From Paraspadella gotoi (Eukaryota; Animalia; Chaetognatha), in assembly GCA_051294375.1 (NCBI GenBank), contig CM119264.1:28624696-28688695 (forward strand): a stretch of DNA of 64,000 nt, in the 5' to 3' direction. The notes beneath the pieces are model-generated. The model was not told the origin of the DNA. It made no database searches and saw only the letters and a list, made by a program, of their open reading frames with translations. Each line of letters begins with the position of its first letter. The stretch's first letter is position 1. Below, piece after piece: positions 10,721 to 61,102 of the stretch. Position numbers and translations under genes: made by a program.

Positions 10721-11663
10721 TCATTGTATTTCCCACGAAAAAAAATCGTTTTCAATACGAAATTCGTAGATCTGGAAACAAGAATCAATTGTTACACGTC
10801 CACCGATTAACTCGACCAGAATTCGAAAACCGACCTTGGCGTAAAGTCTCGAGATCGCGGGAGGAATGTTTTGCGGGCTTGGTACGCAAATGGTGACGCT
10901 TCCGGTCGAGAATATCCGCAAAAGCGCCTTTAAGTCACGGCAGCGGAAAGCGGCACCGGGATGAAGTTCGGGCTCAAAGTCAACCTCCTGAAAAAAATGG
11001 CCCAACGCTCTTGGGTATGACTTATTTACTGTAATGACTATGGAACTCCAACAACCAATCTTGCCACAATCACTTTGGGGTATTTCTCGGCGAACTTATG
11101 AATCCTGACGCCGAAAGGAAAAACACAGGTAGCGAGGACATTCGTGACGCGGAATCGTGCGAACCGAACTTTGTAACCGAGTTTCATTAACATGCGACCG
11201 ATTCGCCGGCAACCTTATTTCGGAAAAAAGTGAGCATTTTTTTTTAATATTCAACTACGAAATAATTGATTAAAAATATAAAATGATGAAATAAAGCTGG
11301 ACCTTTCTTGGCTTCTTCCTCAGAACGAGCGCCCGCGATGGAGACTTTTCCCGATCGCCAGATGGAGCCAGTGATGAGCGGAGAGCGGAGACGAATTAAA
11401 ACGACCTCCCTTTCCGGGCAATACTGGGTATTCCACAAATTTAACGTTACTTTTCGCAGATCGAGGTGGCAACACACTGTAATAACGACAAAAGCCCTTA
11501 ATATTCGAAAGGGGAATGGGCAATGAACCGCCAGCTCAACAGTAAACGTTATACCAGCAAACGAGGCAACGACGTTGTTGATGTAAACATCCAACGGAGG
11601 TGCTGTTTTCTTAAAATTGGAATTTCCAAAGAAATTCAATGATTGATTAGTTTGTAGATTCAT
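10721..11663 (-). CDS. TBPL1: TBP-like factor TRF2/TLF
   Basis: Exons 11663-11555, 11476-11303, 11213-11074, 10987-10835, 10771-10721, all phase-consistent. LDVYINNVVASF, CHLDLRKV, LRSPLITGSIWRSGKV.IAGARSEEEAKKG, VTNVLATC.FPFGVR, FEPELHPGAAFR...LRIFSTGSVT match the TLF/TRF2 subtype rather than TBP. Last-exon frame is less certain (homopolymer). Confidence 0.9.
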
Positions 11664-11793
11664 TGGACTAGATCTTTTAAAAAAAACGTTACACGATGAG
11701 CGAAAGGTCGACAAATCAATCACAATGTCGCGCACGACCTAATGTTTATTATAATATATAGTTGAATAAAAACACTTGGTAACAGTTCGATTT

Positions 11794-13466
11794 TCAAAAA
11801 ATGACTTGCTCTCTGAAATGCTTCTGCAACTTGTTGGCTTTGACCCCGAGGCGCATGTGGCTCTTTTGGAAGGCGTTTCGGGCAAAGGTTTCGTCCTTGG
11901 CCTTGACTTTGGCGGCTTCGCCAGTCGAGCCCGTCCAACCCAGAGCTCTATAATGCGACAAAAGCTTTTGCACAGCCGTTCTTTGCTTCGAGACGACGGC
12001 GTTATGGAATCTTGGAGGACAAAAAAGGAGATACGATGGTGATACGCGGGTTCGAGAAACAACTTCACATTAAAGAATCGAACCTTGGATTGAGCGATTG
12101 TCGATAGTAGCGCTGCAAGGAACGATGTCCGACCGTTGCGCCGGAGGGAAGAACCAGTTGATATCCATCACCATCTAATTCTTCGATCGATAAATCGTCT
12201 TCTGAACAGGAATCTAATAATATTTTTACCATAATCGTATCTTAAAAATAATAATAATAATAATAATATTCAAATATTTAGAAGCGCAGTGGCGAACCTT
12301 CAGTAGTACCACATTCCACCTCCATGTCCGTATCAACGGTTTTCTCGGGATTGTAGTCAGGATAACTTGGTCGGTAGTCGTAATAGTCCGAATATTCTAA
12401 AAAAGCGTCACCTGATCCAACGAAATAAGTTAAAAGAGGACAACATTTTAACAGTAGTCACCGCCATTACCTTCATGAAGCATTTTTGTGTGTCCCTTGT
12501 CTTGCATATGCTTCTGAGCGGCTTCCACACTCTGAAAAGCCTTCCCCTTTTCGTTGCACCAAAGGCAGAGAAATCCACAGCCGACTTTCTCGCCAAGGTA
12601 AGTGAGAAGCCCCGCGGGATCCACGAGGTATTCCAGATCGGGAATGAAAAAGCTGTGGGTCGTGGACATGTGCACCAGGTTGTCTTCGACCGACTTGAAC
12701 TTCTTGCAGCAGAACAAACAGGTCAGGTTCGAAAGGGGCTTTCCCCCGCCCCACAAAAGACCGTCGTTATCTCCGTCAAGCCCTTGGTACGGGATGGGAA
12801 AAGAAACTGGTATTTCTAACAAAAGTAATTGAGAAATAAAATTTCAATAAAAAAAAAAAAAAAACAAGGAATGAGACTTCGCTTACCTTCCTCCGCGTCC
12901 GCCTCCTCTCCCTCGTCCTCATCCAAGCTTTCCCAACCTTCTTCGTCTTCATCTTCTTCCTCCTCCATCTCCTCCTTGGCCGCCTTTATCGCGGCGACCC
13001 TCTCCTTCGGTCCCGGACCCCGCCTCCTCTTCGCCTCCACCGAAGATTCCGACTTCTTGGCCACGATCACCACCGCTTCGTCCGCTCCACGTTTGGCCGC
13101 CGCCTCCTTGTGCTTCTTCGATTCGAGATGACTGCGCAAGGAATTGTCGGAGGCGAAGGTCTTGGAGCAAACTGCGCAGCGGCTCGCGGTGGACGAAGTC
13201 GTTTCGGCCTTAGACTCCTTGATAAGTTGGTCGGTCTTTTCGACGAAAGCCTTGAGAGTGATTGAAGGCAGCGAAACCACTTTGCGCTTGAGGTTGTATC
13301 TGGAAATCGGGGTTGACAAAGGAGTTAACTAATGCGCACTTAACCTCTGAAGTAGTTTGTGGGCTAACCTGTGCCATTCCGACTTGTAATGGAGTCTTTG
13401 TTGATCCCCAACGTCGAATTGGACTCGACAAGTGACGCAGGTAAACATTCCGCCGCCGGTTAACAT
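11794..13466 (-). CDS. ZNF622: ZNF622/REI1 pre-60S maturation zinc-finger protein
   Basis: About six exons: 13466-13369, 13299-12887, 12815-~12460, ~12400-12298, ~12213-12084, ~12015-11794. FTCVTCRVQF..QRLHYKSEWHRYNLKRKV, CAVCSKTF..LRSHLESKKH, CLFC..LVHMSTTHSFFIPD..YLGEKVGCGFLCLWCNEKGK, LVLPSGATVGHRSLQRYYRQ, YRALGWTG, HFREQVIF*. Confidence 0.93.
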
Positions 13467-13513
13467 TTTTTTTTCTCGACGACCCTTTGGCTCAAAGCTT
13501 TGATTAAAAATGT

Positions 13514-13768
13514 CTAATTGGAGTGCAAGAACCCGGCCTTCTTCAAAAGAAAAGGCGCCAACTGCAAAGTGATGACTGTGACGGCGAATTGCGTGAGGCT
13601 TCGCTTCACTTGGGACAATGCCAATCGGTTTTCGGCTTCCGGGTCGGACAGTGCTGTGAATAGAGGATGGGAACATGCAAGCTTGACAAAAGACCGCGAA
13701 ACAAATGGTTTTCTCATAAACATGAACAAAACTCAAATTTACGAACCTTTTTGTCCGATGCGAAGCAT
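13514..13768 (-). CDS. TOMM5: Mitochondrial import receptor subunit TOM5-like microprotein (53 aa, two exons)
   Basis: Exon 1 13768-13747 (AAAAG|GTTCGT), 93-nt intron, exon 2 13653-13514 (TTCACAG|). Product MLRIGQKALSDPEAENRLALSQVKRSLTQFAVTVITLQLAPFLLKKAGFLHSN resembles metazoan TOM5 as recalled (M.RI...DPEE...V..S...F...V..L...PF.LKK). Confidence 0.75.
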
Positions 13769-13849
13769 AATTTAACGTGTCTAAAATGATAAAAACGAAA
13801 GAATCAATGGCAAACAATTAAAAAAAAAATACATAGTTCATGTCATTAA

Positions 13850-16417
13850 TTAATAAGGATGAGACTTGAATGAATTTAAATGGAATCTGCCGGTGGATGG
13901 AGTCTTTTGTGAAGCCGGTACAAAATCCTCATCATCCCCATCTTCAGATTTTTCGTCGCGTTCGAAAAGATCCCCGCATCTTCGGCTGGTGACAGTTCTC
14001 TGAGGACGACGATTGAGAAAGTTCGCCGGGGTTTGTGAAGGAAAAACTATGTCATCGTTATCGTGGTCGTCGTCTTTGTCAACGGCAATCGTTTCTCGAC
14101 AAGATCGAGGGTCGAGTTGATCTTCATCGTATTTCCGTCCAATTTCCGGTTTTTGGGAGGAAAAGACGACGTCGTCGCTCGAGTTGGCAGACGAATCCAC
14201 GTTACGGTCGTCCGACGAAGCGTTCCCGGTCGAAAAAAGGTTGGAGTTCCTCGAGGGGCTTTCGGCGATGCTCCCGATCGCTGGGGAATTGTTGCTAGAT
14301 CCCAATGCTTTAAGTCGCTATGGAAAAAAAGAAAAGAAAAGGTAATCGCCGTCAGTATCGATAAAAATAAATAATCCGACACAAGCTTAGACAAATCAAT
14401 AACCTTGAGCAACTGAGAAGCGGAGTTTTCATCGGTCTCAACCGATTGATATTTTTCGTCATCACAGTAATTTGAGGAAGAGAGATTGTCAAAGATGTGA
14501 TTGTCGGAATGGTCTTGATTGGATGAGGGCCAAGCAATCCAGAATAAATTAAAATATAAATATAAATTTCATAAAAAGATTAGTTAAAAATATCATGATT
14601 CGCAAAGTAATAGACTTATTATCATCATTACCATCATTACAACAGAGATATCCCTCTGTTAGACTTACCTCGAGATTCGTTGACGTGAGGTATAAATGAT
14701 CTCCGCTTAGTGAGAAACATAAGGGATTTCCTTGCGGATCTTCGCGCCTTCGGACTCAACTCTTCGAGACAAGTCTTCATTAGTTCGTCATCTTCGTCCG
14801 ACGACCAAAAGTGATTGGACTGAAACATCAATTGGATTTGGAATTATGTTATCAGCCTTTAAACGGTCTACGACTCCTCTAAATCATTAAAACTTACGTC
14901 GAAGTCGTGAAAAGGTACGATGGACAAAGTTTCTGTTTTGACTCCAGAATTAAAACCGGGTCCAGGTCTCGTCTTCTCTTCCGACGAACAACTGGATGCC
15001 GATATCGGTCGAGTTTGCGGCGGAGTACGAAAGGCTCCGCAAACGGGTTCCCGGAATCCCTTCGCTCCAACGGGAGTTAAGGGAGGGTATGAAGGGACGA
15101 CCGGAACTTTGAAGGCTTGAGCGGTAGTGGGAGTTGAGTGGAGTGGCGCCGAAGTCGGACTAGAAACGACGCCCGGCCCTGATCGAAGCCGATCCGGCAC
15201 AGCCGAGGGCTTCGGGGAAAAAAGGGTTGGTCCTAGCGAAGTTGGGGAGACGTAAGGCACGAAGGGAACCGGAAGTGAAGGGACGGAAGAGTCGAGGAAA
15301 GAGGAGTCGTCTCGACTCGAAGACGAGGATTGTCCGAAATCTGCTTGAACGCTCGCGTCGGCCACCTCGACGCGAGAGAGACTGGATGAGACGTCGTCGA
15401 AGGATGAGGACGTGACTGGAGATGCTAGACTGTCGAGGGAAGCATCGGCGAATCCGTGGGCGTCTTCCTCGAAAGGGAGAGTCACTTGGACGGAGGAATC
15501 GACGACTTGAACGAAATCTGCATCGTCTTCATTATTTTGGTCGACACCGCTGCGGTCATTTTCCCGCCCCGTGAATGAGCAATTTTCTTCTATTTGAGAG
15601 GCATCGAGCGCGAGGGAGGTTTGAATAGCAGTGTCACACACCTCAACGTAGGACAAATTCTGCATTAAAAATAAATAAGTTTGTAAAAAATAACTAGAGA
15701 CAAGGATCGGACAAACTGTTCAGTAAAGTATAAACTTAAACTCGCCTGTTGTCGTTGACTGGAATCTTGAACCGAAAGTTGCGAAAATACATCGTGAAGT
15801 TTTTCGATTTTGGCGGCGGCGGAAACGTAAAGCGATTGATGCGATTCTATCGATACAGGATTAAATTGATAAAAATTTTATATTTTCATGAAACAGATAA
15901 AAAGTAATATATTTAAATATTTAAAACAAAAATATTTAACAAATAAATAAAATCATAAATATAAGTTATTTTAAATCTAAAAAATAAAAAATAAAGATAG
16001 TGAAACAAGTAATTTTGCAACTTTCATATATATATCACCCGGCTTCGTTGGAGATCCGTAAAGCGGAAACTCGAAGCTTCGATCTTCGGAATGCTCGGTC
16101 AAGGCTTCTGGAATCTGAGACTCAGAGATGTCCACGGAAGAGACGGTGAGGTGTGTCAGAGCTTGACTCAAACCCGATAGATCTGACGACCTCGTTGAGT
16201 GGAGATGGTCGCCATCGCCGACGACGTTTGTCAAGTTGGAATCGTTTTCGTCGTTTGATTCGGATGACAAAACGTCGGTAGCGTCGAAACGATAACCTCT
16301 TCCATTTTCCCTCTTTTTCTTAGTTCCAGGTTTGATAGAGTTGAGTCGGGCAGACCGGCCGACCATGGACGCGCCTCCGCTCTTCTGCGACTCGCGAATG
16401 CGAAGGTTGCGGCTCAT
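13850..16417 (-). CDS. Uncharacterised multi-exon, intrinsically disordered Ser/Asp/Pro-rich protein
   Basis: Phase-compatible exons ~16417-16022, 15660-14898, ~14822-14729, ~14510-14405, ~14325-13850 with canonical sites (e.g. GAC|GTAAGT, CGAG|GTAAGT, TTTTCCATAG|). No domain recognised. Confidence 0.65.
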
Positions 16418-22269: not shown

Positions 22270-25200
22270 CACTTCCTCTCCAATTCTCACTTTGTACTGA
22301 TTAAGAGTGTTGAACGCCACGTAAGCAATCAGATCCACTCGTTTCCTCCTAATTTCTCTCTCAAAGGCCAACAGTTCTTGAATTTCCCGTCAACGCTTTC
22401 TCCTTCGCGAGTCTCAACTGCTTTTCCTCTTCCGTCTCCGGTGGCTTCTTCGGGCTGCCCTTTCCGCCTTTCTTCCCGCCTTTTTTCCCGCCCTTTTTCG
22501 CGTTCCAGTTCGTGTTGATGTCAAAGACGTCGTCGTCGGAGAAATAATCATCCATGGCGCTGTCGTTTACATTTTCCTCTACTTCCGATTCATCGTCGGA
22601 TTCATTTTCGGATTCATCGTCGTCATCTTCGTCGTCGTCGCTTTGCCCGCTACCGGCGTTGATGTTATGCTTTCCCTTGTTCTTTCCTTTCTTCCCCTTT
22701 TTCCCTTTTCCGCCCTTCTCTTCTTTGGGCGGATTCAAGAGTTCGCTCCCTTTCGGCGGCGAGGTGTAGATCTGAAACGCCATCTCCTGAACCTTGGTCA
22801 AATTGGCCAGGGCCTCTTTGTGAGCCTCGTTCAAAATCTTGACGTCCCAAGGAAGATTCGGATCGTTGGGTTGTTCGAGAAAAGGATGTTTCTCCGCCAC
22901 CAAAGCGGGTCCCTTTTTGGCCCCGCCCTTTCCCTTTTTGTCGTCCTTTTTATTTTTTTTCCCTTTGGCCTTGTTCACATTCTCGTCAAAGTTTTCGTTC
23001 GACTCTTCTACCTCTACGGGGTCAGGAAAACTCGGCACGGCCGTCGCCTCCACTTCAACGTTCTTGATGATCATTCGCGGATAAACGTCTTCCCATTTAA
23101 CGTTTTCCAAATCCAGATTTTCTTTATTCATCTTGGCTGCGACTTTGCTCACCGTTTGAGCGAGACTGGGGACATGAGCCGGAGCGATCGGGGACGGAGT
23201 TCGAGGCGGCGGCGGCGGCGGAACCGATTCGTCCGGAACATCATCACCTTCCTCTTCAGTCGGCGAAGGCGGCGGCGGCGGTGGCGGCAGAACCGACACG
23301 AATATCAACGCCGGTCGAGTAAGATTTTGTAAGGCGTCCATCTCTTTAATCTCCAACCCGGTGGACGAAGTGTAATAATCAATGAGAAAAGCGGCGATTC
23401 GACCAAAGAGCTCAACCTCTGCCGATATCAGACTCAAGAAATAGTTTAACGTCATTCCCGTCAGATGGCCGATCCTCTCGTCGAAAAAGAATCGCTCCTT
23501 GTATTTCTTCACGCAGCGAATGACGCGCTCCGTCTCTTCCGCCATCTCCGCTTTGAGATCGTCGATCCGCAGATGCAACTCGGCCAGAGTCTCCTCGTCC
23601 CGCCACATCTCTGGCGGTAGCTCGACGAGATACTCGAGGTGCTTGTCCTTGACGTCCTCGAGCATCGCCGCTTCCCGGACGATCGCCAAGTAATCCGCGA
23701 GATCTTTGGTCTTGTCGTTCAAAAATCCGGTGAGGTCGCGCTGATGATCTTCCATTCGACGAAACAATCGAATGAGGTATGTCAGGTAAGAGCATTCGAT
23801 CAACTTCCAAGATTTCGTCAAGACTTTGAGCCTCTCCGCCGGAATCTCGGTCTGGAGATAATCCGCCGGATTGAATCCGACCGGCTTCGCCTCCGCCGGT
23901 TCCTTTTTTTCCTTTTTTCCTTTTTTACCCTTCTTTCCTTTGCCTCCCTTGGCGCTCACGTTGGCGTCGGACATGGCGCTATAATTGGTGTTAGTTTCCC
24001 AGCGGCTGGATGTGGGCGATTCCGAGGCGACGACGATGTCCAAAAACGGGTGGGCGGCGCCGGGCAAGCTCTCTTTATCGTCGTCGACTTCATCGCTATC
24101 TTCGTCGCTATCGTCGTCGCTATCGTCGTCGCTATCGTCGCTGGAATCGCTCGAGAGATTCGCGTTCGAATTCGTGTTCCGATTTTTGGATTTTCCTTTT
24201 TTACCGCCTTTTTTGTCTTTGCCTTTTTTTCCTTTTCCTTTTTTTCCCTTCGGCGGAGGTGACTCGACGGGGGGCGGTTCCGGGGGCTTCTCCAACTCCT
24301 CCAAGATCTTCAACGTCTTCTCTAGGGTGACCTCTTCCAACTTTAACCAGACGTCGTCGGCGACGTCTTCGTGTTCTCTATCGCCGTCGACGGTCCTCAC
24401 AGCGGCGAAACCTTGGAACCAGGCGCCCATCTCCTTCCAGGCCTCCATCGTGGCGTCGATCCGCGTCAGCGCTTGTCGGCGCCAGTCCGACGTCGACGGA
24501 ACGGCCTGTGGTTTCCCCGGAAACGGCGACAGACTCCCGAAAGGCATGGGCACGAATTCTAGATGGCGCTCGGTCGACGCCATCTTGGATTTTTCCTCTT
24601 CTTTCTCGCCGAATTCCGTCTCCATTTCGTAGACGCCTCGGTTCCTCTTGACGACCTCATCGAACGATCTCTCCACCTTAATGAAGCAATCCAATCCGCA
24701 CTTGGGATTGTCGCATTCCTGCGGTTCGATCAACACGGGATCCTTGACGATCGAAGAGGCGTACATCGGCATCTTCCGCCAAAGTTCCCCGCGGAAGCAT
24801 CCGTCGACGGTGGTGAGCAATGAAGGAGGCCGCGGATCCGTGGACAGGGGACAAACGTAGCCGGTGAGGTAACGGGACAACCAAGCGGCCTGAGCGACGT
24901 TGCGCGGGAACCCGTCGAGGACCCAACCCGTATCGTCTGAGATTTGAGTGATCTGGATGGCGGCCAACTTGGCGAGGTGTTTATCGAGAGTGGGTTTCCC
25001 TTCCTAGAGGGATTAGGGGGGGGGGAAGGGACTGAACCCTGGACTCTTCTTAGTCGAGTGAAAATATATGGTTAATAAACAATGGCTAAAACATATTAGA
25101 AAATTATTAGTTGCGGCGCCAGTACTCGCGGAGCAACTCTATAAGTCACTTTTCGGTCGGACTGTTGGTCGGTATGTCTGTCCGGTATGTATGTCTGCCT

Positions 25201-36194: not shown

Positions 36195-39100
36195 ATGAAG
36201 GACGATATCCGCGACGACGCCGAAGACGACGACGACGACGACAGTTTCCGACCCGACGGCCACATCGACGCCTGGACATCTCGCGATGCGAACTTCGCCG
36301 TCGACAACACGAATCGATCCGCGCGGAAGACCAAGGGCGACAAATCCGTCCAAGTGGACAAGACTCGGGAAAAGTGGAGAGTGTCGGTGCTACGCGGCAA
36401 CGTACCGCGCCGCGCGCTCGACGAGCTTCTTCTCAAGATCGGCCTCTGGGGCTTCTTCCCCCTCGGCGTCCTTCTTCTCCTCTACTACGCCAACGCCCTC
36501 GCCAAAATGTACATGCCGCTCGCCACCTTCGTCGCCTGGATGCCGCATCATTGCTGCAAAGTCAATGGATCGCTGAGGGTGAGGAAAATGGGTGAGGGNN
36601 NNNNNNNNNNNNNNNNNNNNNNNNNNNNNNNNNNNNNNNNNNNNNNNNNNNNNNNNNNNNNNNNNNNNNNNNNNNNNNNNNNNNNNNNNNNNNNNNNNNN
36701 NNNNNNNNNNNNNNNNNNNNNNNNNNNNNNNNNNNNNNNNNNNNNNNNNNNNNNNNNNNNNNNNNNNNNNNNNNNNNNNNNNNNNNNNNNNNNNNNNNNN
36801 NNNNNNNCCTCCTTTCTTCTTTCATTCCTTCCTTCCTTCCTTTTTTCATTCCTTTCTTCTTTCCTTCTTTCCTTTTTTCATTCCTTCCTTCCTTCCTTCC
36901 TTCCTTCCTTCCTNNNNNNNNNNNNNNNNNNNNNNNNNNNNTCCTTCCTTCCTTCCTTCCTTCTTTCCTTTCTTCTTTCCTTCTCAACAGGAAGCAATAG
37001 ACGCTACGTCGAGTCCATCCCTACTCTCTTGGACCTCCAAACCTCGACCTCACTCGACGGACTCGTTGAGCGGAGGCCACGACTCGGCGACCTGCAAGAA
37101 ATTGGTCCGACANNNNNNNNNNNNNNNNNNNNNNNNNNNNNNNNNNNNNNNNNNNNNNNNNNNNNNNNNNNNNNNNNNNNNNNNNNNNNNNNNNNNNNNN
37201 NNNNNNNNNNNNNNNNNNNNNNNNNNNNNNNNNNNNNNNNNNNNNNNNNNNNNNNNNNNNNNNNNNNNNNNNNNNNNNNNNNNNNNNNNNNNNNNNNNNN
37301 NNNNNNNNNNNNNNNNNNNNNNNNNNNNNNNNNNNNNNNNNNNNNNNNNNNNNNAAAACCTGTTACCCTAATAGTAATACTGTTACAGGTAACATGTAAC
37401 ATGTAACAGGTTCTATGTTTGTTTTCCAAAGAGCGCGCCAAATGTCCTTCAAAATGTGTTTTTGCTTCACCAAAAGAGCATCGAGCCTTTTTATTCACGA
37501 GCCTTTCGAACTTAGGTTGGAATTACGCGACTCAAAAATCCAACTCTCTCTCCGCGGACGAGGATCTCGGCTGCCGCAACGTCCACTACGTGGCGCAGAT
37601 CGCCAACGCCGTCTTCATGGGCGGGTTCGGAGTCGGCGGACTCTTCCACGGTGTACTCGCCGACGCCTACGGGCGAAAGCCGGTCCTCGTGACCTCGACG
37701 TGGTCCTTGGGGATCTACGGATTCGTGACCGGGACGGTTCCCGACGAGGCGAGTCCGGAACGAGACATCCCTGCCCGCATGATGTCGTCTAAGGTGTTAA
37801 TTTATGGCACCTCGTTTTTTGTAGACGGCTTTTATAGGGGTGCGTTTTCTTCACGGGTTTTTCGTGGGCGGAATCAGTCTCGCTTCCTCCACCATGATCT
37901 GCGAGCTTTTTCCTTCGAAGCAGAGAGCTATTCCGCACATGCTGATACAAGTAATTNNNNNNNNNNNNNNNNNNNNNNNNNNNNNNNNNNNNNNNNNNNN
38001 NNNNNNNNNNNNNNNNNNNNNNNNNNNNNNNNNNNNNNNNNNNNNNNNNNNNNNNNNNNNNNNNNNNNNNNNNNNNNNNNNNNNNNNNNNNNNNNNNNNN
38101 NNNNNNNNNNNNNNNNNNNNNNNNNNNNNNNNNNNNNNNNNNNNNNNNNNNNNNNNNNNNNNNNNNNNNNNNNNNNNNNNNNNNNNNNNNNNNNNNNNNN
38201 NNNNNNNNNNNNNNNNNNNNNNNNNNNNNNNNNNNNNNNNNNNNNNNNNNNNNNNNNNNNNNNNNNNNNNNNNNNNNNNNNNNNNNNNNNNNNNNNNNNN
38301 NNNNNNNNNNNNNNNNNNNNNNNNNNNNNNNNNNNNNNNNNNNNNNNNNNNNNNNNNNNNNNNNNNNNNNNNNNNNNNNNNNNNNNNNNNNNNNNNNNNN
38401 NNNNNNNNNNNNNNNNNNNNNNNNNNNNNNNNNNNNNNNNNNNNNNNNNNNNNNNNTATCACCCTCGCCGCGGCCACAGGCGCGCCTGCGAGTATCTCCA
38501 ATCGGTGATTGATTCGCGCGGGATGGAGGCCGACGTCTACGAGGAACTCTACATCAACGCCTCCCGTATGGTCGGTCAGTCGGGCTCCGAGATCGATTTC
38601 AAGCCGCCCGTCGAGGAAACCAACGTCAACGCCGGCAACGACGACGACGACGATGACGACGACGACGACGAGGGCATCGTCGTCGACGGAGACAAAAACA
38701 ACAACAACGACGACGACGGCGAGGACGACGACGACGACGACGATGATGACGACGACGAAAACCGGAACCGAAACGAGCAACCGTATCCTAGCAACGAGAC
38801 GAACGAGTCTTTCCTCAAGCCGAATGGTCGTCGTCCTTCTGCGTCCGAGTGGAGTTTGGAGGCGATCATCGTCGTCGGCGTGCTTTCCACTTTGACGCTT
38901 ATAAACGTGAGTGGGTCGGGTGGGGGGGGGGGAAAGAGGTTGGTTGAAGGGGGGGGAGTTGTATTCACCGCATATAAAATTGGTACAACCAATATATTTT
39001 ATTTATTTATTTATTCTACTTACGTTTAAATGCGTAAAAAAATTTGCTATAGCTATTGGACAATGGACATGGACATTGGACATGGACATTGGACAATGGA

Positions 39101-52453: not shown

Positions 52454-61102
<8,649 letters not shown>

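What the first reader, a model, noticed from the sequence alone, without database searches (positions are those of the whole stretch)
13467..13849. Hidden two-exon TOM5 microprotein wedged in front of ZNF622, possibly a bicistronic mRNA
Seen: a 53-aa spliced ORF that the ORF track shows only in part, with a false start. It is preceded 12 nt upstream by a strong acceptor (TTTCGTTTTTATCATTTTAG, 13781). The 47 nt after its stop contain no AATAAA, only a weak TTTTTAATCAAAG acceptor (13498). Inference: TOM5 either acts as a conserved uORF on the ZNF622 mRNA (reinitiation or leaky scanning) or is cut off by trans-splicing. Either would couple mitochondrial import with ribosome maturation.
Basis: partly seen in the sequence, partly recalled or inferred. 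Interest (0 to 1): 0.7.

Follow-up and report, generated by a model that had tools for sequence, protein, structure and literature searches.

The report
Conserved TOM5–ZNF622 two-protein mRNA
A tiny two-exon gene for the mitochondrial import subunit TOM5 sits 47 bases in front of the ribosome-maturation gene ZNF622, and in six related arrow-worm (chaetognath) species the two reading frames travel on one mature, spliced-leader-capped, polyadenylated mRNA, which is an exception in a phylum that normally cuts its operons into single-gene mRNAs.

Summary
On the minus strand, exon 1 (13768-13747), a 93-nt GT..AG intron (13746-13654) and exon 2 (13653-13514) give a 53-aa peptide. An acceptor ends at 13781, and a 47-nt spacer without AATAAA or ATTAAA leads to the ZNF622 ATG at 13466.

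The peptide is TOM5:
- Pfam Tom5 scores 25.4 bits against a cut-off of 26.1.
- A six-sequence profile hits human TOM5 end to end at E=1.4e-5.
- dN/dS is about 0.1.

Relatives were found on metatranscriptome contigs that begin with published chaetognath spliced leaders (SL2.0, SL1). Of 26 ZNF622 cDNA contigs, 22 carry TOM5 just upstream, with spacers of 34-197 nt. Fifteen start with the leader in front of TOM5 and none has a leader in the spacer. Two run from the cDNA 5' end through leader, TOM5 and ZNF622 to the poly(A) tail. One contig joins the leader directly to TOM5 exon 2, which confirms the intron position and removes the TOM5 AUG. Spacers hold few ATGs (2 observed against 8-12 expected).

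Most likely this is a conserved, unresolved bicistronic mRNA inside an operon-like cluster. No RNA data exist for the window species, and how ZNF622 is translated is unsettled. A functional link between mitochondrial import and ribosome maturation is unsupported.

The parts
13850..14305 (-). Last long exon/ORF of an unidentified Ser/Asp-rich upstream gene on the same strand. Its stop lies 81 nt before the TOM5 ATG.
   Evidence: ORF list; no Pfam hit. Its membership in the same transcription unit is inferred from spacing only.
13781..13800 (-). Pyrimidine-rich acceptor TTTCGTTTTTATCATTTTAG, the predicted spliced-leader (SL) trans-splice site for TOM5. It holds the only AG in the 81-nt intergenic stretch.
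   Evidence: Sequence. In relatives the SL is joined 18-67 nt upstream of the TOM5 ATG. The SL sequence is absent from the window.
13769..13780 (-). Predicted 12-nt 5' UTR of TOM5 after SL addition.
   Evidence: Sequence; inference from relatives.
13747..13768 (-). TOM5 exon 1 (22 nt: ATG plus 7 codons and 1 base; MLRIGQK).
   Evidence: The N-terminus matches the orthologues' MLR[LM]G. The exon 1 length of 22 nt is confirmed by the SL junction in L020.
13654..13746 (-). TOM5 intron, 93 nt, GT..AG, phase 1. Its acceptor is a candidate alternative SL acceptor.
   Evidence: The donor GTTCGT resembles the ZNF622 donors GTTCGC and GTTCGA. In relative L020 the SL is joined at the equivalent exon 2 start.
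13514..13653 (-). TOM5 exon 2 including the TAG stop. It encodes the conserved SDPEAEN motif and the C-terminal transmembrane segment with its conserved Pro.
   Evidence: Pfam Tom5; PDB TOM5 hits; HMMER orthologue P0019 at E=1e-10.
13467..13513 (-). 47-nt intercistronic spacer. It has no ATG, no AATAAA or ATTAAA, and only weak AG sites.
11794..13466 (-). ZNF622/REI1-like gene with six exons (13466-13369, 13299-12878, 12782-12471, 12411-12298, 12198-12084, 12010-11794), encoding 425 aa.
   Evidence: tblastn against the L001 protein and the splice model; Pfam zf-C2H2_jaz and zf-C2H2_2; homologues named ZNF622/REI1.
11745..11750 (-). AATAAA 44 nt after the ZNF622 stop codon. This is the conventional 3'-end signal that the TOM5-ZNF622 spacer lacks.
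   Evidence: Sequence.
11674..11690 (-). T-rich acceptor (AACGTTTTTTTTAAAAG) 10 nt before the ATG of the next gene. It looks like an ordinary SL-resolved operon junction.
   Evidence: Sequence; inference.
10721..11663 (-). TBP-like gene, 130 nt downstream of the ZNF622 stop on the same strand.
   Evidence: Pfam TBP at E=1.2e-14 and 7e-8 on its two long ORF pieces.

Best explanation
The window comes from a chaetognath-type genome; the species was not determined. It holds a genuine two-exon gene for TOM5, the roughly 50-aa tail-anchored subunit of the mitochondrial outer-membrane translocase.

TOM5 lies in an operon-like row of same-strand genes: a Ser/Asp-rich gene, then 81 nt, TOM5, 47 nt, ZNF622, 130 nt, and a TBP-like gene. 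A spliced leader is added at the acceptor ending at 13781, and the 93-nt intron is removed. Unlike an ordinary operon junction, the TOM5-ZNF622 junction is not cut, so the mature mRNA reads leader, TOM5, 47-nt spacer, ZNF622, poly(A).

TOM5 is translated from the first AUG. ZNF622 is translated by ribosomes that reach its AUG through an AUG-poor stretch, either by leaky scanning past the TOM5 AUG or by reinitiation after the 53-codon ORF. A minor isoform probably also contributes: the leader is spliced onto the TOM5 intron acceptor, which deletes exon 1 and the TOM5 AUG and makes the ZNF622 AUG the first one.

Shown directly: the sequence anatomy, the TOM5 and ZNF622 identities, and the bicistronic SL-to-poly(A) transcripts and exon-1-less isoform in relatives. 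Inferred: that the window species does the same, and the mode of ZNF622 translation.
For: TOM5 identity:
- Pfam Tom5 E=1.4e-5. All six orthologues hit Tom5, best 2.9e-9.
- With the single peptide, the only three PDB hits are TOM5 chains. The six-sequence profile hits human TOM5 1-48 at E=1.4e-5, and its top four hits are all TOM5.
- dN/dS is 0.08-0.2 with saturated synonymous sites.

Splice model:
- P0019 and five other cDNA-encoded orthologues are colinear with exon 1 plus exon 2.
- The SL junction in L020 falls after a 22-nt exon 1, the same length as in the window.

The relatives are chaetognaths: the 5' ends equal SL2.0 (GGAAGCTTATAATTGAGTAGTTTCAATTTGTTTAAA) and SL1 of Table 3 in PMC2481426.

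Bicistron:
- 22 of 26 ZNF622 contigs from many independent JGI and Logan samples carry TOM5 upstream. They represent six distinct TOM5 sequences.
- 15 contigs have the SL in front of TOM5, and none has an SL in the spacer.
- L003 and L004 run from the template-switch remnant through SL, TOM5 and ZNF622 to 41 A's. L025 has both SL and poly(A).
- The spacers of L005, L025 and L013 hold 0, 1 and 1 AG beyond the stop codon.
- Spacers hold 2 ATG against 7.7 expected from dinucleotide shuffles (P=0.005) or 12.1 from composition (P=5e-4). The ZNF622 3' UTRs hold 27 against 25.7.

Within the window, the next junction (ZNF622 to the TBP-like gene) has AATAAA and a T-rich acceptor, while the TOM5-ZNF622 spacer has neither.
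Against: - No RNA data exist for the window species, so everything about its transcripts is by homology. ZNF622 is only 54-61% identical to the relatives' proteins.
- Assembled contigs cannot give isoform proportions. In principle they could include partially processed precursors.
- Spacers of L001, L013 and L025 carry AATAAA or ATTAAA, and in L028 one overlaps the stop codon. TOM5-only mRNAs ending there are therefore possible and would not have been retrieved.
- The TOM5 AUG always has A at -3, so it is not obviously leaky, and a 50-55-codon ORF is long for efficient reinitiation.
- The absence of ATG from exon 2 is fully explained by the protein sequence (codon-level null expectation 0.6), so it adds nothing.
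- L001 and L005 each have one ATG in the spacer.
- The exon-1-less isoform rests on a single contig (L020).
- L011 and L012 show no TOM5 in their short upstream stretches.
Confidence: 0.72

Rival explanations
1. This is an ordinary SL-resolved operon junction. TOM5 mRNA is polyadenylated inside the 47-nt spacer, and ZNF622 receives its own spliced leader at one of the spacer's AGs (for example TTTTTAATCAAAG at 13498). The bicistronic contigs in relatives would then be unprocessed intermediates.
For: Chaetognath operons are reported to be resolved this way. Only 3 nt separate the poly(A) site from the acceptor in RPS14-PCNA, and 18% of P. gotoi genes lie in operons less than 250 bp apart. The window spacer holds four AGs beyond the stop codon.
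Against: None of 26 contigs has a leader in the spacer, while 15 have it in front of TOM5. Contigs with both a leader and a poly(A) tail span both ORFs. In three species the spacer has almost no AG. The spacers are ATG-depleted, as expected of a scanned leader. The window spacer has no poly(A) hexamer and only weak pyrimidine tracts.
Confidence: 0.12
2. ZNF622 is effectively monocistronic. Its working mRNA is the isoform in which the leader is spliced onto the TOM5 intron acceptor, so there is no TOM5 AUG. The full bicistronic form yields only TOM5. Choice of SL acceptor, not reinitiation or leaky scanning, decides which protein is made.
For: Contig L020 reads template-switch remnant, an SL variant, then the first base of TOM5 exon 2. 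From there no ATG occurs before the ZNF622 AUG. The same SL variant is seen at the normal site in L018. Exon 2 plus spacer is ATG-free in the window and in four of six relatives.
Against: This is one contig among 10 shown (22 on record) for that species, and none was found in the other species. The absence of ATG in exon 2 follows from the protein sequence alone.
Confidence: 0.25
3. The small ORF is only a regulatory upstream ORF that throttles ZNF622 translation. Its peptide has no function of its own.
For: It lies upstream of a main ORF on the same mRNA, and its AUG has a good -3 A (read from the 5'-UTR sequences printed).
Against: The peptide sequence is conserved with dN/dS of about 0.1 while synonymous sites are saturated. 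It matches the TOM5 family end to end, including the transmembrane Pro. The one whole-library search (E<=0.001, clusters at 50% identity) returned a single TOM5-like cluster, so no clearly separate TOM5 lineage surfaced, but that search could not have separated close paralogues.
Confidence: 0.04
4. These are two independent transcription units that merely overlap. ZNF622 has its own promoter inside or just after TOM5.
For: Compact genomes often have overlapping units. L011 and L012 show ZNF622 with 135 and 93 nt of upstream sequence without TOM5 or a leader.
Against: The upstream stretches of L011 and L012 are shorter than several known spacers, so they are uninformative. In three other species the ZNF622 contigs that reach a true cDNA 5' end (template-switch remnant) start with a leader upstream of TOM5 or at its exon 2.
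Confidence: 0.05

Closest known systems
Chaetognath spliced-leader operons (RPS14-PCNA in Spadella cephaloptera, PMC2481426; 1,470 validated operons in Paraspadella gotoi, PMC12460157)
   Same: Same-strand genes lie less than 250 bp apart. The leader on the relatives' transcripts is identical to published SL2.0 and SL1. The flanking junctions (upstream gene to TOM5, and ZNF622 to the TBP-like gene) look like ordinary ones.
   Different: The TOM5-ZNF622 junction is not resolved. No leader appears on ZNF622 in any contig, and both ORFs stay on one polyadenylated mRNA. Both papers describe operons as being resolved into single-gene mRNAs.
Animal dicistronic or uORF-encoded microprotein genes (from memory: Drosophila sloth1/sloth2, human MIEF1 upstream microprotein, SNURF-SNRPN)
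   Same: A conserved small protein, here a mitochondrial one, is encoded upstream of a larger conserved ORF on one capped, polyadenylated mRNA. The downstream ORF must be reached by leaky scanning or reinitiation.
   Different: Here the mRNA carries a trans-spliced leader, in a phylum that has the machinery to separate cistrons. The two proteins have no known shared pathway. An alternative SL acceptor can delete the upstream AUG.
TOM5/TOMM5 (Pfam PF10642; human TOM5 in PDB 7ck6)
   Same: About 50 aa, an N-terminal M-[LF]-R, an acidic DPE segment, and a C-terminal transmembrane helix with a conserved Pro followed by basic residues. The profile aligns 1-47 to human 1-48.
   Different: The window peptide scores 0.7 bit under Pfam's cut-off on its own. 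The chaetognath proteins have no Met after exon 1, whereas the human protein has internal Mets in the aligned region. The gene is physically tied to ZNF622; the human genes are on different chromosomes (from memory).
Alternative SL trans-splicing at internal acceptors and the '5' UTR sanitising' idea for SL addition (from memory: nematodes, tunicates)
   Same: Adding the leader at a downstream acceptor discards upstream sequence that contains AUGs.
   Different: The discarded piece here is the start codon of a real, conserved protein gene, so the choice of acceptor changes which protein the mRNA can encode.

Membership tests
TOM5 / TOMM5 (Pfam PF10642) | Match to the family HMM at or above the curated cut-off | tested here: inconclusive
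   The window peptide scores 25.4 bits against a cut-off of 26.1 (E=1.4e-5). All six chaetognath-type orthologues hit Tom5, best E=2.9e-9. One is marked as an unqualified Tom5 hit in the precomputed table (L025).
TOM5 / TOMM5 (Pfam PF10642) | End-to-end similarity to an experimentally solved TOM5 | tested here: met
   The profile of six sequences hits human TOM5 (7ck6_I) at E=1.4e-5, positions 1-47 to 1-48. The next hits are a TOM fusion that contains TOM5 and two other TOM5 chains.
TOM5 / TOMM5 (Pfam PF10642) | About 50 residues with a single C-terminal transmembrane segment containing a conserved Pro, and a charged N-terminal part | tested here: met
   53 aa. FAVTVITLQLAPFLLKK aligns with human FLIYVALLRVTPFILKK. 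Pro41 is invariant in the six-sequence alignment.
TOM5 / TOMM5 (Pfam PF10642) | Physical subunit of the TOM40 complex in the mitochondrial outer membrane | not testable with these tools
   Needs fractionation, co-purification or a structure.
SL-resolved operon (chaetognath or nematode type) | [quoted passage not shown] | tested here: met
   The gaps are 81, 47 and 130 nt. The criterion is taken from PMC12460157.
SL-resolved operon (chaetognath or nematode type) | The downstream gene (ZNF622) receives its own spliced leader in the intercistronic region | tested here: not met
   Tested in relatives only. None of 26 contigs has a leader in the spacer, and three species have 0-1 AG there beyond the stop codon. 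Not tested in the window species.
SL-resolved operon (chaetognath or nematode type) | The upstream gene (TOM5) is polyadenylated before the downstream acceptor | tested here: inconclusive
   No TOM5-only contig could be looked up. Poly(A) hexamers exist in four of seven spacers but not in the window.
Eukaryotic bicistronic mRNA encoding two proteins | Two non-overlapping conserved ORFs on one mature (5'-capped or SL-bearing, spliced, polyadenylated) mRNA | tested here: met
   Met in relatives. L003 and L004 read template-switch remnant, SL2.0, TOM5, 197 or 191 nt, intronless ZNF622, then A41. L025 has SL1 and poly(A). For the window species this is inferred.
Eukaryotic bicistronic mRNA encoding two proteins | Both ORFs are translated from that same mRNA | not testable with these tools
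   Needs ribosome profiling, reporters or proteomics. The ATG-poor spacers are indirect support.

The most novel reading that the evidence does not exclude
The choice of spliced-leader acceptor works as a switch inside one transcription unit. A leader added at the upstream acceptor gives an mRNA that makes TOM5, plus some ZNF622. A leader added at the acceptor of the TOM5 intron deletes the 22-nt first exon with its AUG and gives a ZNF622-only mRNA. On this reading the tiny first exon, the intron and the AUG-free exon 2 and spacer have been kept across chaetognaths for that purpose. This would be a way of apportioning two proteins from an unresolved operon pair that has not been described.
Probability: 0.25. 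Interest if true: 0.75.

Novelty: new variant of a known kind. Interest (0 to 1): 0.6.

Why it matters
- **Annotation.** A 53-aa, two-exon gene with a 22-nt first exon is the kind that gene finders miss. Here it is an essential-complex subunit.
- **An exception to a stated rule.** Operons in chaetognaths, and SL operons generally, are described as being resolved into single-gene mRNAs. This pair stays unresolved while synonymous sites have saturated, so the linkage is old and presumably selected.
- **A testable system.** It offers a natural case for asking how a downstream cistron is translated on a leader-capped animal mRNA (leaky scanning, reinitiation, or alternative leader acceptor). The sequence variants across species are already at hand.

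It says nothing yet about any functional link between mitochondrial import and 60S ribosome maturation.

Tried and rejected
- The word-indexed protein search with the 53-mer found nothing because the query is too short.
Exon 2 was submitted as a window reference instead.
- The metagenome scan with the TOM5 alignment only re-found the L001 contig.
- Rfam and tRNA scans of the window found nothing, and no SL gene was found in the window.
- Cluster look-ups only showed that TOM5 peptides sit on contigs of bicistronic size. One 610-aa cluster member (P0143) is an unrelated ABC-F ATPase, a clustering artefact.
- The nemertean control look-up failed.
- The Capitella control showed no TOM5-like sequence within 10 kb of ZNF622. 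This is one control only.
- The ATG desert in TOM5 exon 2 (0 observed against 10.6 expected from composition) was rejected as evidence. A codon-level null given the protein sequence expects only 0.6.
- An IRES-type explanation was considered. Folding was not run, because the spacers vary from 34 to 197 nt and show no obvious shared sequence on inspection; they were not formally aligned.
- P0038/L024 (48% identity) has no TOM5 in the 111 nt upstream, and its ZNF622 is the most divergent of the group (48% identity), so it may lie outside it. It was not counted.

Full report
**1. What is in the sequence**

Everything lies on the minus strand. An ATG at 13768 opens a 22-nt exon (13768-13747) that ends at a GT donor (GTTCGT). 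A 93-nt intron (13746-13654) ends in CACAG. Exon 2 (13653-13514) runs to a TAG stop. The spliced product is 53 aa: MLRIGQKALSDPEAENRLALSQVKRSLTQFAVTVITLQLAPFLLKKAGFLHSN. The unspliced reading hits stops after 9 codons.

Twelve bases before the ATG, TTTCGTTTTTATCATTTTAG ends at 13781. It holds the only AG in the 81 nt that separate the ATG from the stop of the preceding same-strand ORF at 13850.

After the TAG come 47 nt (13513-13467). They contain no ATG and no AATAAA or ATTAAA, and their AGs follow poor pyrimidine tracts. Then comes the ATG (13466) of a six-exon gene with introns of 69, 95, 59, 99 and 73 nt, all GT-AG. Its 425-aa product has zf-C2H2_jaz and zf-C2H2_2 domains, and its named homologues are ZNF622 or the pre-60S factor REI1.

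**2. The small protein is TOM5**

- Pfam Tom5 (PF10642) matches at E=1.4e-5 and 25.4 bits, which is 0.7 bit under the curated cut-off.
- Against all PDB chains, the only three hits of the single peptide are TOM5 chains.
- A full HMMER pass over 1.84 billion representatives with exon 2 found one clear relative, P0019 (55 aa, E=1e-10). Its N-terminus MLRLG matches the window's exon 1.
- Five more orthologues came from cDNA contigs (section 3). All six sequences hit Pfam Tom5, best 2.9e-9.
- Their profile aligns end to end with human TOM5 (7ck6_I, E=1.4e-5, positions 1-47 to 1-48), and the top four PDB hits are all TOM5.
- Pairwise dN/dS is about 0.08-0.2, with one pair at 0.44, while synonymous sites are saturated. 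The peptide itself is under selection, not just the presence of an ORF.

**3. The relatives are chaetognaths, and there the two ORFs share one mature mRNA**

P0019 sits on a 1,784-nt JGI contig (L001). That contig carries TOM5, a 147-nt spacer and an intronless 434-aa ZNF622.

A profile search with ZNF622 gave a tight group of unnamed proteins from transcript-sized contigs (54-59% identity). The best named hits reach only 44% identity and come from a nemertean, bivalves and amphioxus. I fetched contigs for nine proteins of this group (P0019, P0022, P0023, P0027-P0030, P0036, P0037).

Several contigs begin with ACATGGGG. From my own knowledge this is the tail of a template-switch oligo and so marks a true cDNA 5' end. 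It is followed by GAAGCTTATAATTGAGTAGTTTCAATTTGTTTAAA. A full-text search for part of that string found exactly one paper, the chaetognath transcriptome study, where it is spliced leader SL2.0. Other contigs begin with the 3' part of SL1.

Tally over 26 contigs from many independent samples and two assembly sources:
- 22 carry the TOM5 ORF upstream of ZNF622. They represent six distinct TOM5 sequences, with spacers of 34, 84, 106, 147, 168 and 191/197 nt.
- One starts within the last TOM5 codons.
- Two have only 93-135 nt of upstream sequence and are uninformative.
- 15 have a leader in front of TOM5.
- None has a leader in the spacer.
- Four end in poly(A) after the ZNF622 3' UTR.

L003 and L004 are complete from the 5' end to a 41-A tail. 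They read leader, 33-nt 5' UTR, TOM5, spacer, ZNF622, 3' UTR, poly(A). In three species the spacer has at most one AG beyond the stop codon, so it offers almost no place to trans-splice.

**4. Cross-check of the intron, and an alternative leader site**

One contig (L020) has the template-switch remnant and an SL variant joined directly to CTCCTTCCGATCCC. In the sister contigs this follows ATGTTACGAATGGGCAATAAAT, a 22-nt exon 1 of the same length as in the window. The same SL variant is also seen at the normal site, in L018.

This fixes the intron position independently of the window. It also shows that the leader can be spliced to the intron's acceptor, which removes the TOM5 AUG. From that junction to the ZNF622 AUG there is no ATG.

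**5. Signature of scanning**

Across the seven spacers (783 nt) there are 2 ATGs. Composition predicts 12.1 (Poisson P=5e-4), and dinucleotide-preserving shuffles predict 7.7 (P=0.005). The ZNF622 3' UTRs of the same contigs have 27 against 25.7 expected. This fits ribosomes having to travel through the spacer to the ZNF622 AUG.

TOM5 exon 2 also has no ATG in any frame. I do not count that as evidence, because resampling synonymous codons for the same proteins gives an expectation of only 0.6.

The two exceptions are a 7-codon mini-ORF in L001 and an out-of-frame ATG 4 nt before the called start in L005. The ZNF622 ORF of L005 also has an odd N-terminal extension.

**6. Context in the window**

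ZNF622 ends at 11794. An AATAAA lies at 11750-11745. A T-rich acceptor ends at 11674, and a TBP-like gene starts at 11663 (Pfam TBP). The window therefore holds four same-strand genes with gaps of 81, 47 and 130 nt. This meets the operon criterion (less than 250 bp) used for Paraspadella gotoi, where 18% of genes are in operons said to be resolved by trans-splicing.

The ZNF622 to TBP-like junction has the usual signals. The TOM5 to ZNF622 junction has none. The leader sequence itself is absent from the window, as expected for trans-splicing.

**7. Interpretation**

Most likely the window species also makes a leader-capped, polyadenylated TOM5-ZNF622 mRNA. ZNF622 is a conserved 60S biogenesis factor, and the only transcripts recovered for it in these relatives carry TOM5 sequence upstream. 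It must therefore be translated from the bicistronic form, from the exon-1-less form, or from both. Which one dominates is open:
- The TOM5 AUG always has A at -3, so it is not obviously leaky.
- The ORF is long for reinitiation.
- The exon-1-less isoform rests on one contig.
- Several spacers carry poly(A) hexamers, so TOM5-only mRNAs may also exist.

**8. Limits**

There are no reads from the window species. Contigs are assemblies and give no isoform proportions. The species of the window was not determined. Only one non-chaetognath control was possible: in Capitella no TOM5-like sequence lies within 10 kb of ZNF622. No paper in the held library links TOMM5 with ZNF622, or Tom5 with a bicistronic mRNA.

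**9. Verdict**

The feature is a new variant of a known kind: an evolutionarily old, unresolved two-protein mRNA embedded in a spliced-leader operon system. The suggested functional coupling of mitochondrial import and ribosome maturation is unsupported.

Noticed in passing
L003, L004, L019, L025 (3' ends); compare window 11674-11750: The poly(A) tails of the relatives' ZNF622 mRNAs begin immediately after a pyrimidine-rich ...TTTTTTCAG or ...TTTTGCAG, and none of the four has a canonical AATAAA or ATTAAA hexamer nearby (L019 has only a near-match, ATATAAA). The 3' end seems to coincide with the trans-splice acceptor of the next gene, in line with the 3-nt gap reported for RPS14-PCNA in PMC2481426.
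   Followed up: partly
window 10721-11663 (-): A TBP-like gene (Pfam TBP on two ORF pieces) starts 130 nt after the ZNF622 stop and is preceded by AATAAA and a T-rich acceptor. It is probably the next cistron of the same operon.
   Followed up: partly
window 13850-16417 (-): Long Ser/Asp-rich ORFs (13850-14305, 14868-15665, 15977-16417) with no Pfam match lie upstream of TOM5 on the same strand. This may be a lineage-specific disordered protein and possibly the first gene of the cluster.
   Followed up: partly
L005-L010, positions about 245-330 of L005: In this species the ZNF622 ORF has a 27-aa N-terminal extension (MKLVYLSTMLTDSR...) and an out-of-frame ATG 4 nt upstream (ATGTATG). The true start may be a downstream Met.
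   Followed up: no
L011 1-31: The contig starts with 31 T's directly in front of an ATG-free 104-nt leader and ZNF622, with no TOM5 and no spliced leader. It could be an artefact, the poly(A) of an antisense transcript, or a paralogue. Unexplained.
   Followed up: no
L006, L009, L018, L020 (5' ends): Further spliced-leader variants appear, for example ...GAAGCATATATATATAAAACTTGCTTGTTTAAA and GAAGCTTAAAATTTATCTTCACTTGCTTAAA. They are not among the forms visible in the excerpt of Table 3 of PMC2481426 returned. Several variants are used on the same gene.
   Followed up: no
window 22361-24967 (-): An 868-aa single-exon ORF with a weak adenylate-kinase match at its start (E=0.002, below the cut-off) and long Lys/Gly- and Asp-rich low-complexity stretches.
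   Followed up: no
window 55733-56335 (-) and 37419-37940 (+): One exon matches a sterol-sensing or Patched domain (E=1.7e-8). Another weakly matches a major-facilitator transporter (E=3.9e-5, below the cut-off). The region from about 36.4 to 40.6 kb is broken by several runs of N, which are assembly gaps.
   Followed up: no
window, e.g. about 44.4 kb, 48.8-49.4 kb, 52.5-53.0 kb, 59.8-60.0 kb: Many long (CT)n/(GA)n microsatellites, which read as SLSLSL... in the ORF list, and other low-complexity tracts.
   Followed up: no
P0143: A 610-aa bacterial-type ABC-F ATPase is listed as a member of the 90% cluster of a 49-aa TOM5 peptide. This is a clustering artefact in the protein collection.
   Followed up: yes
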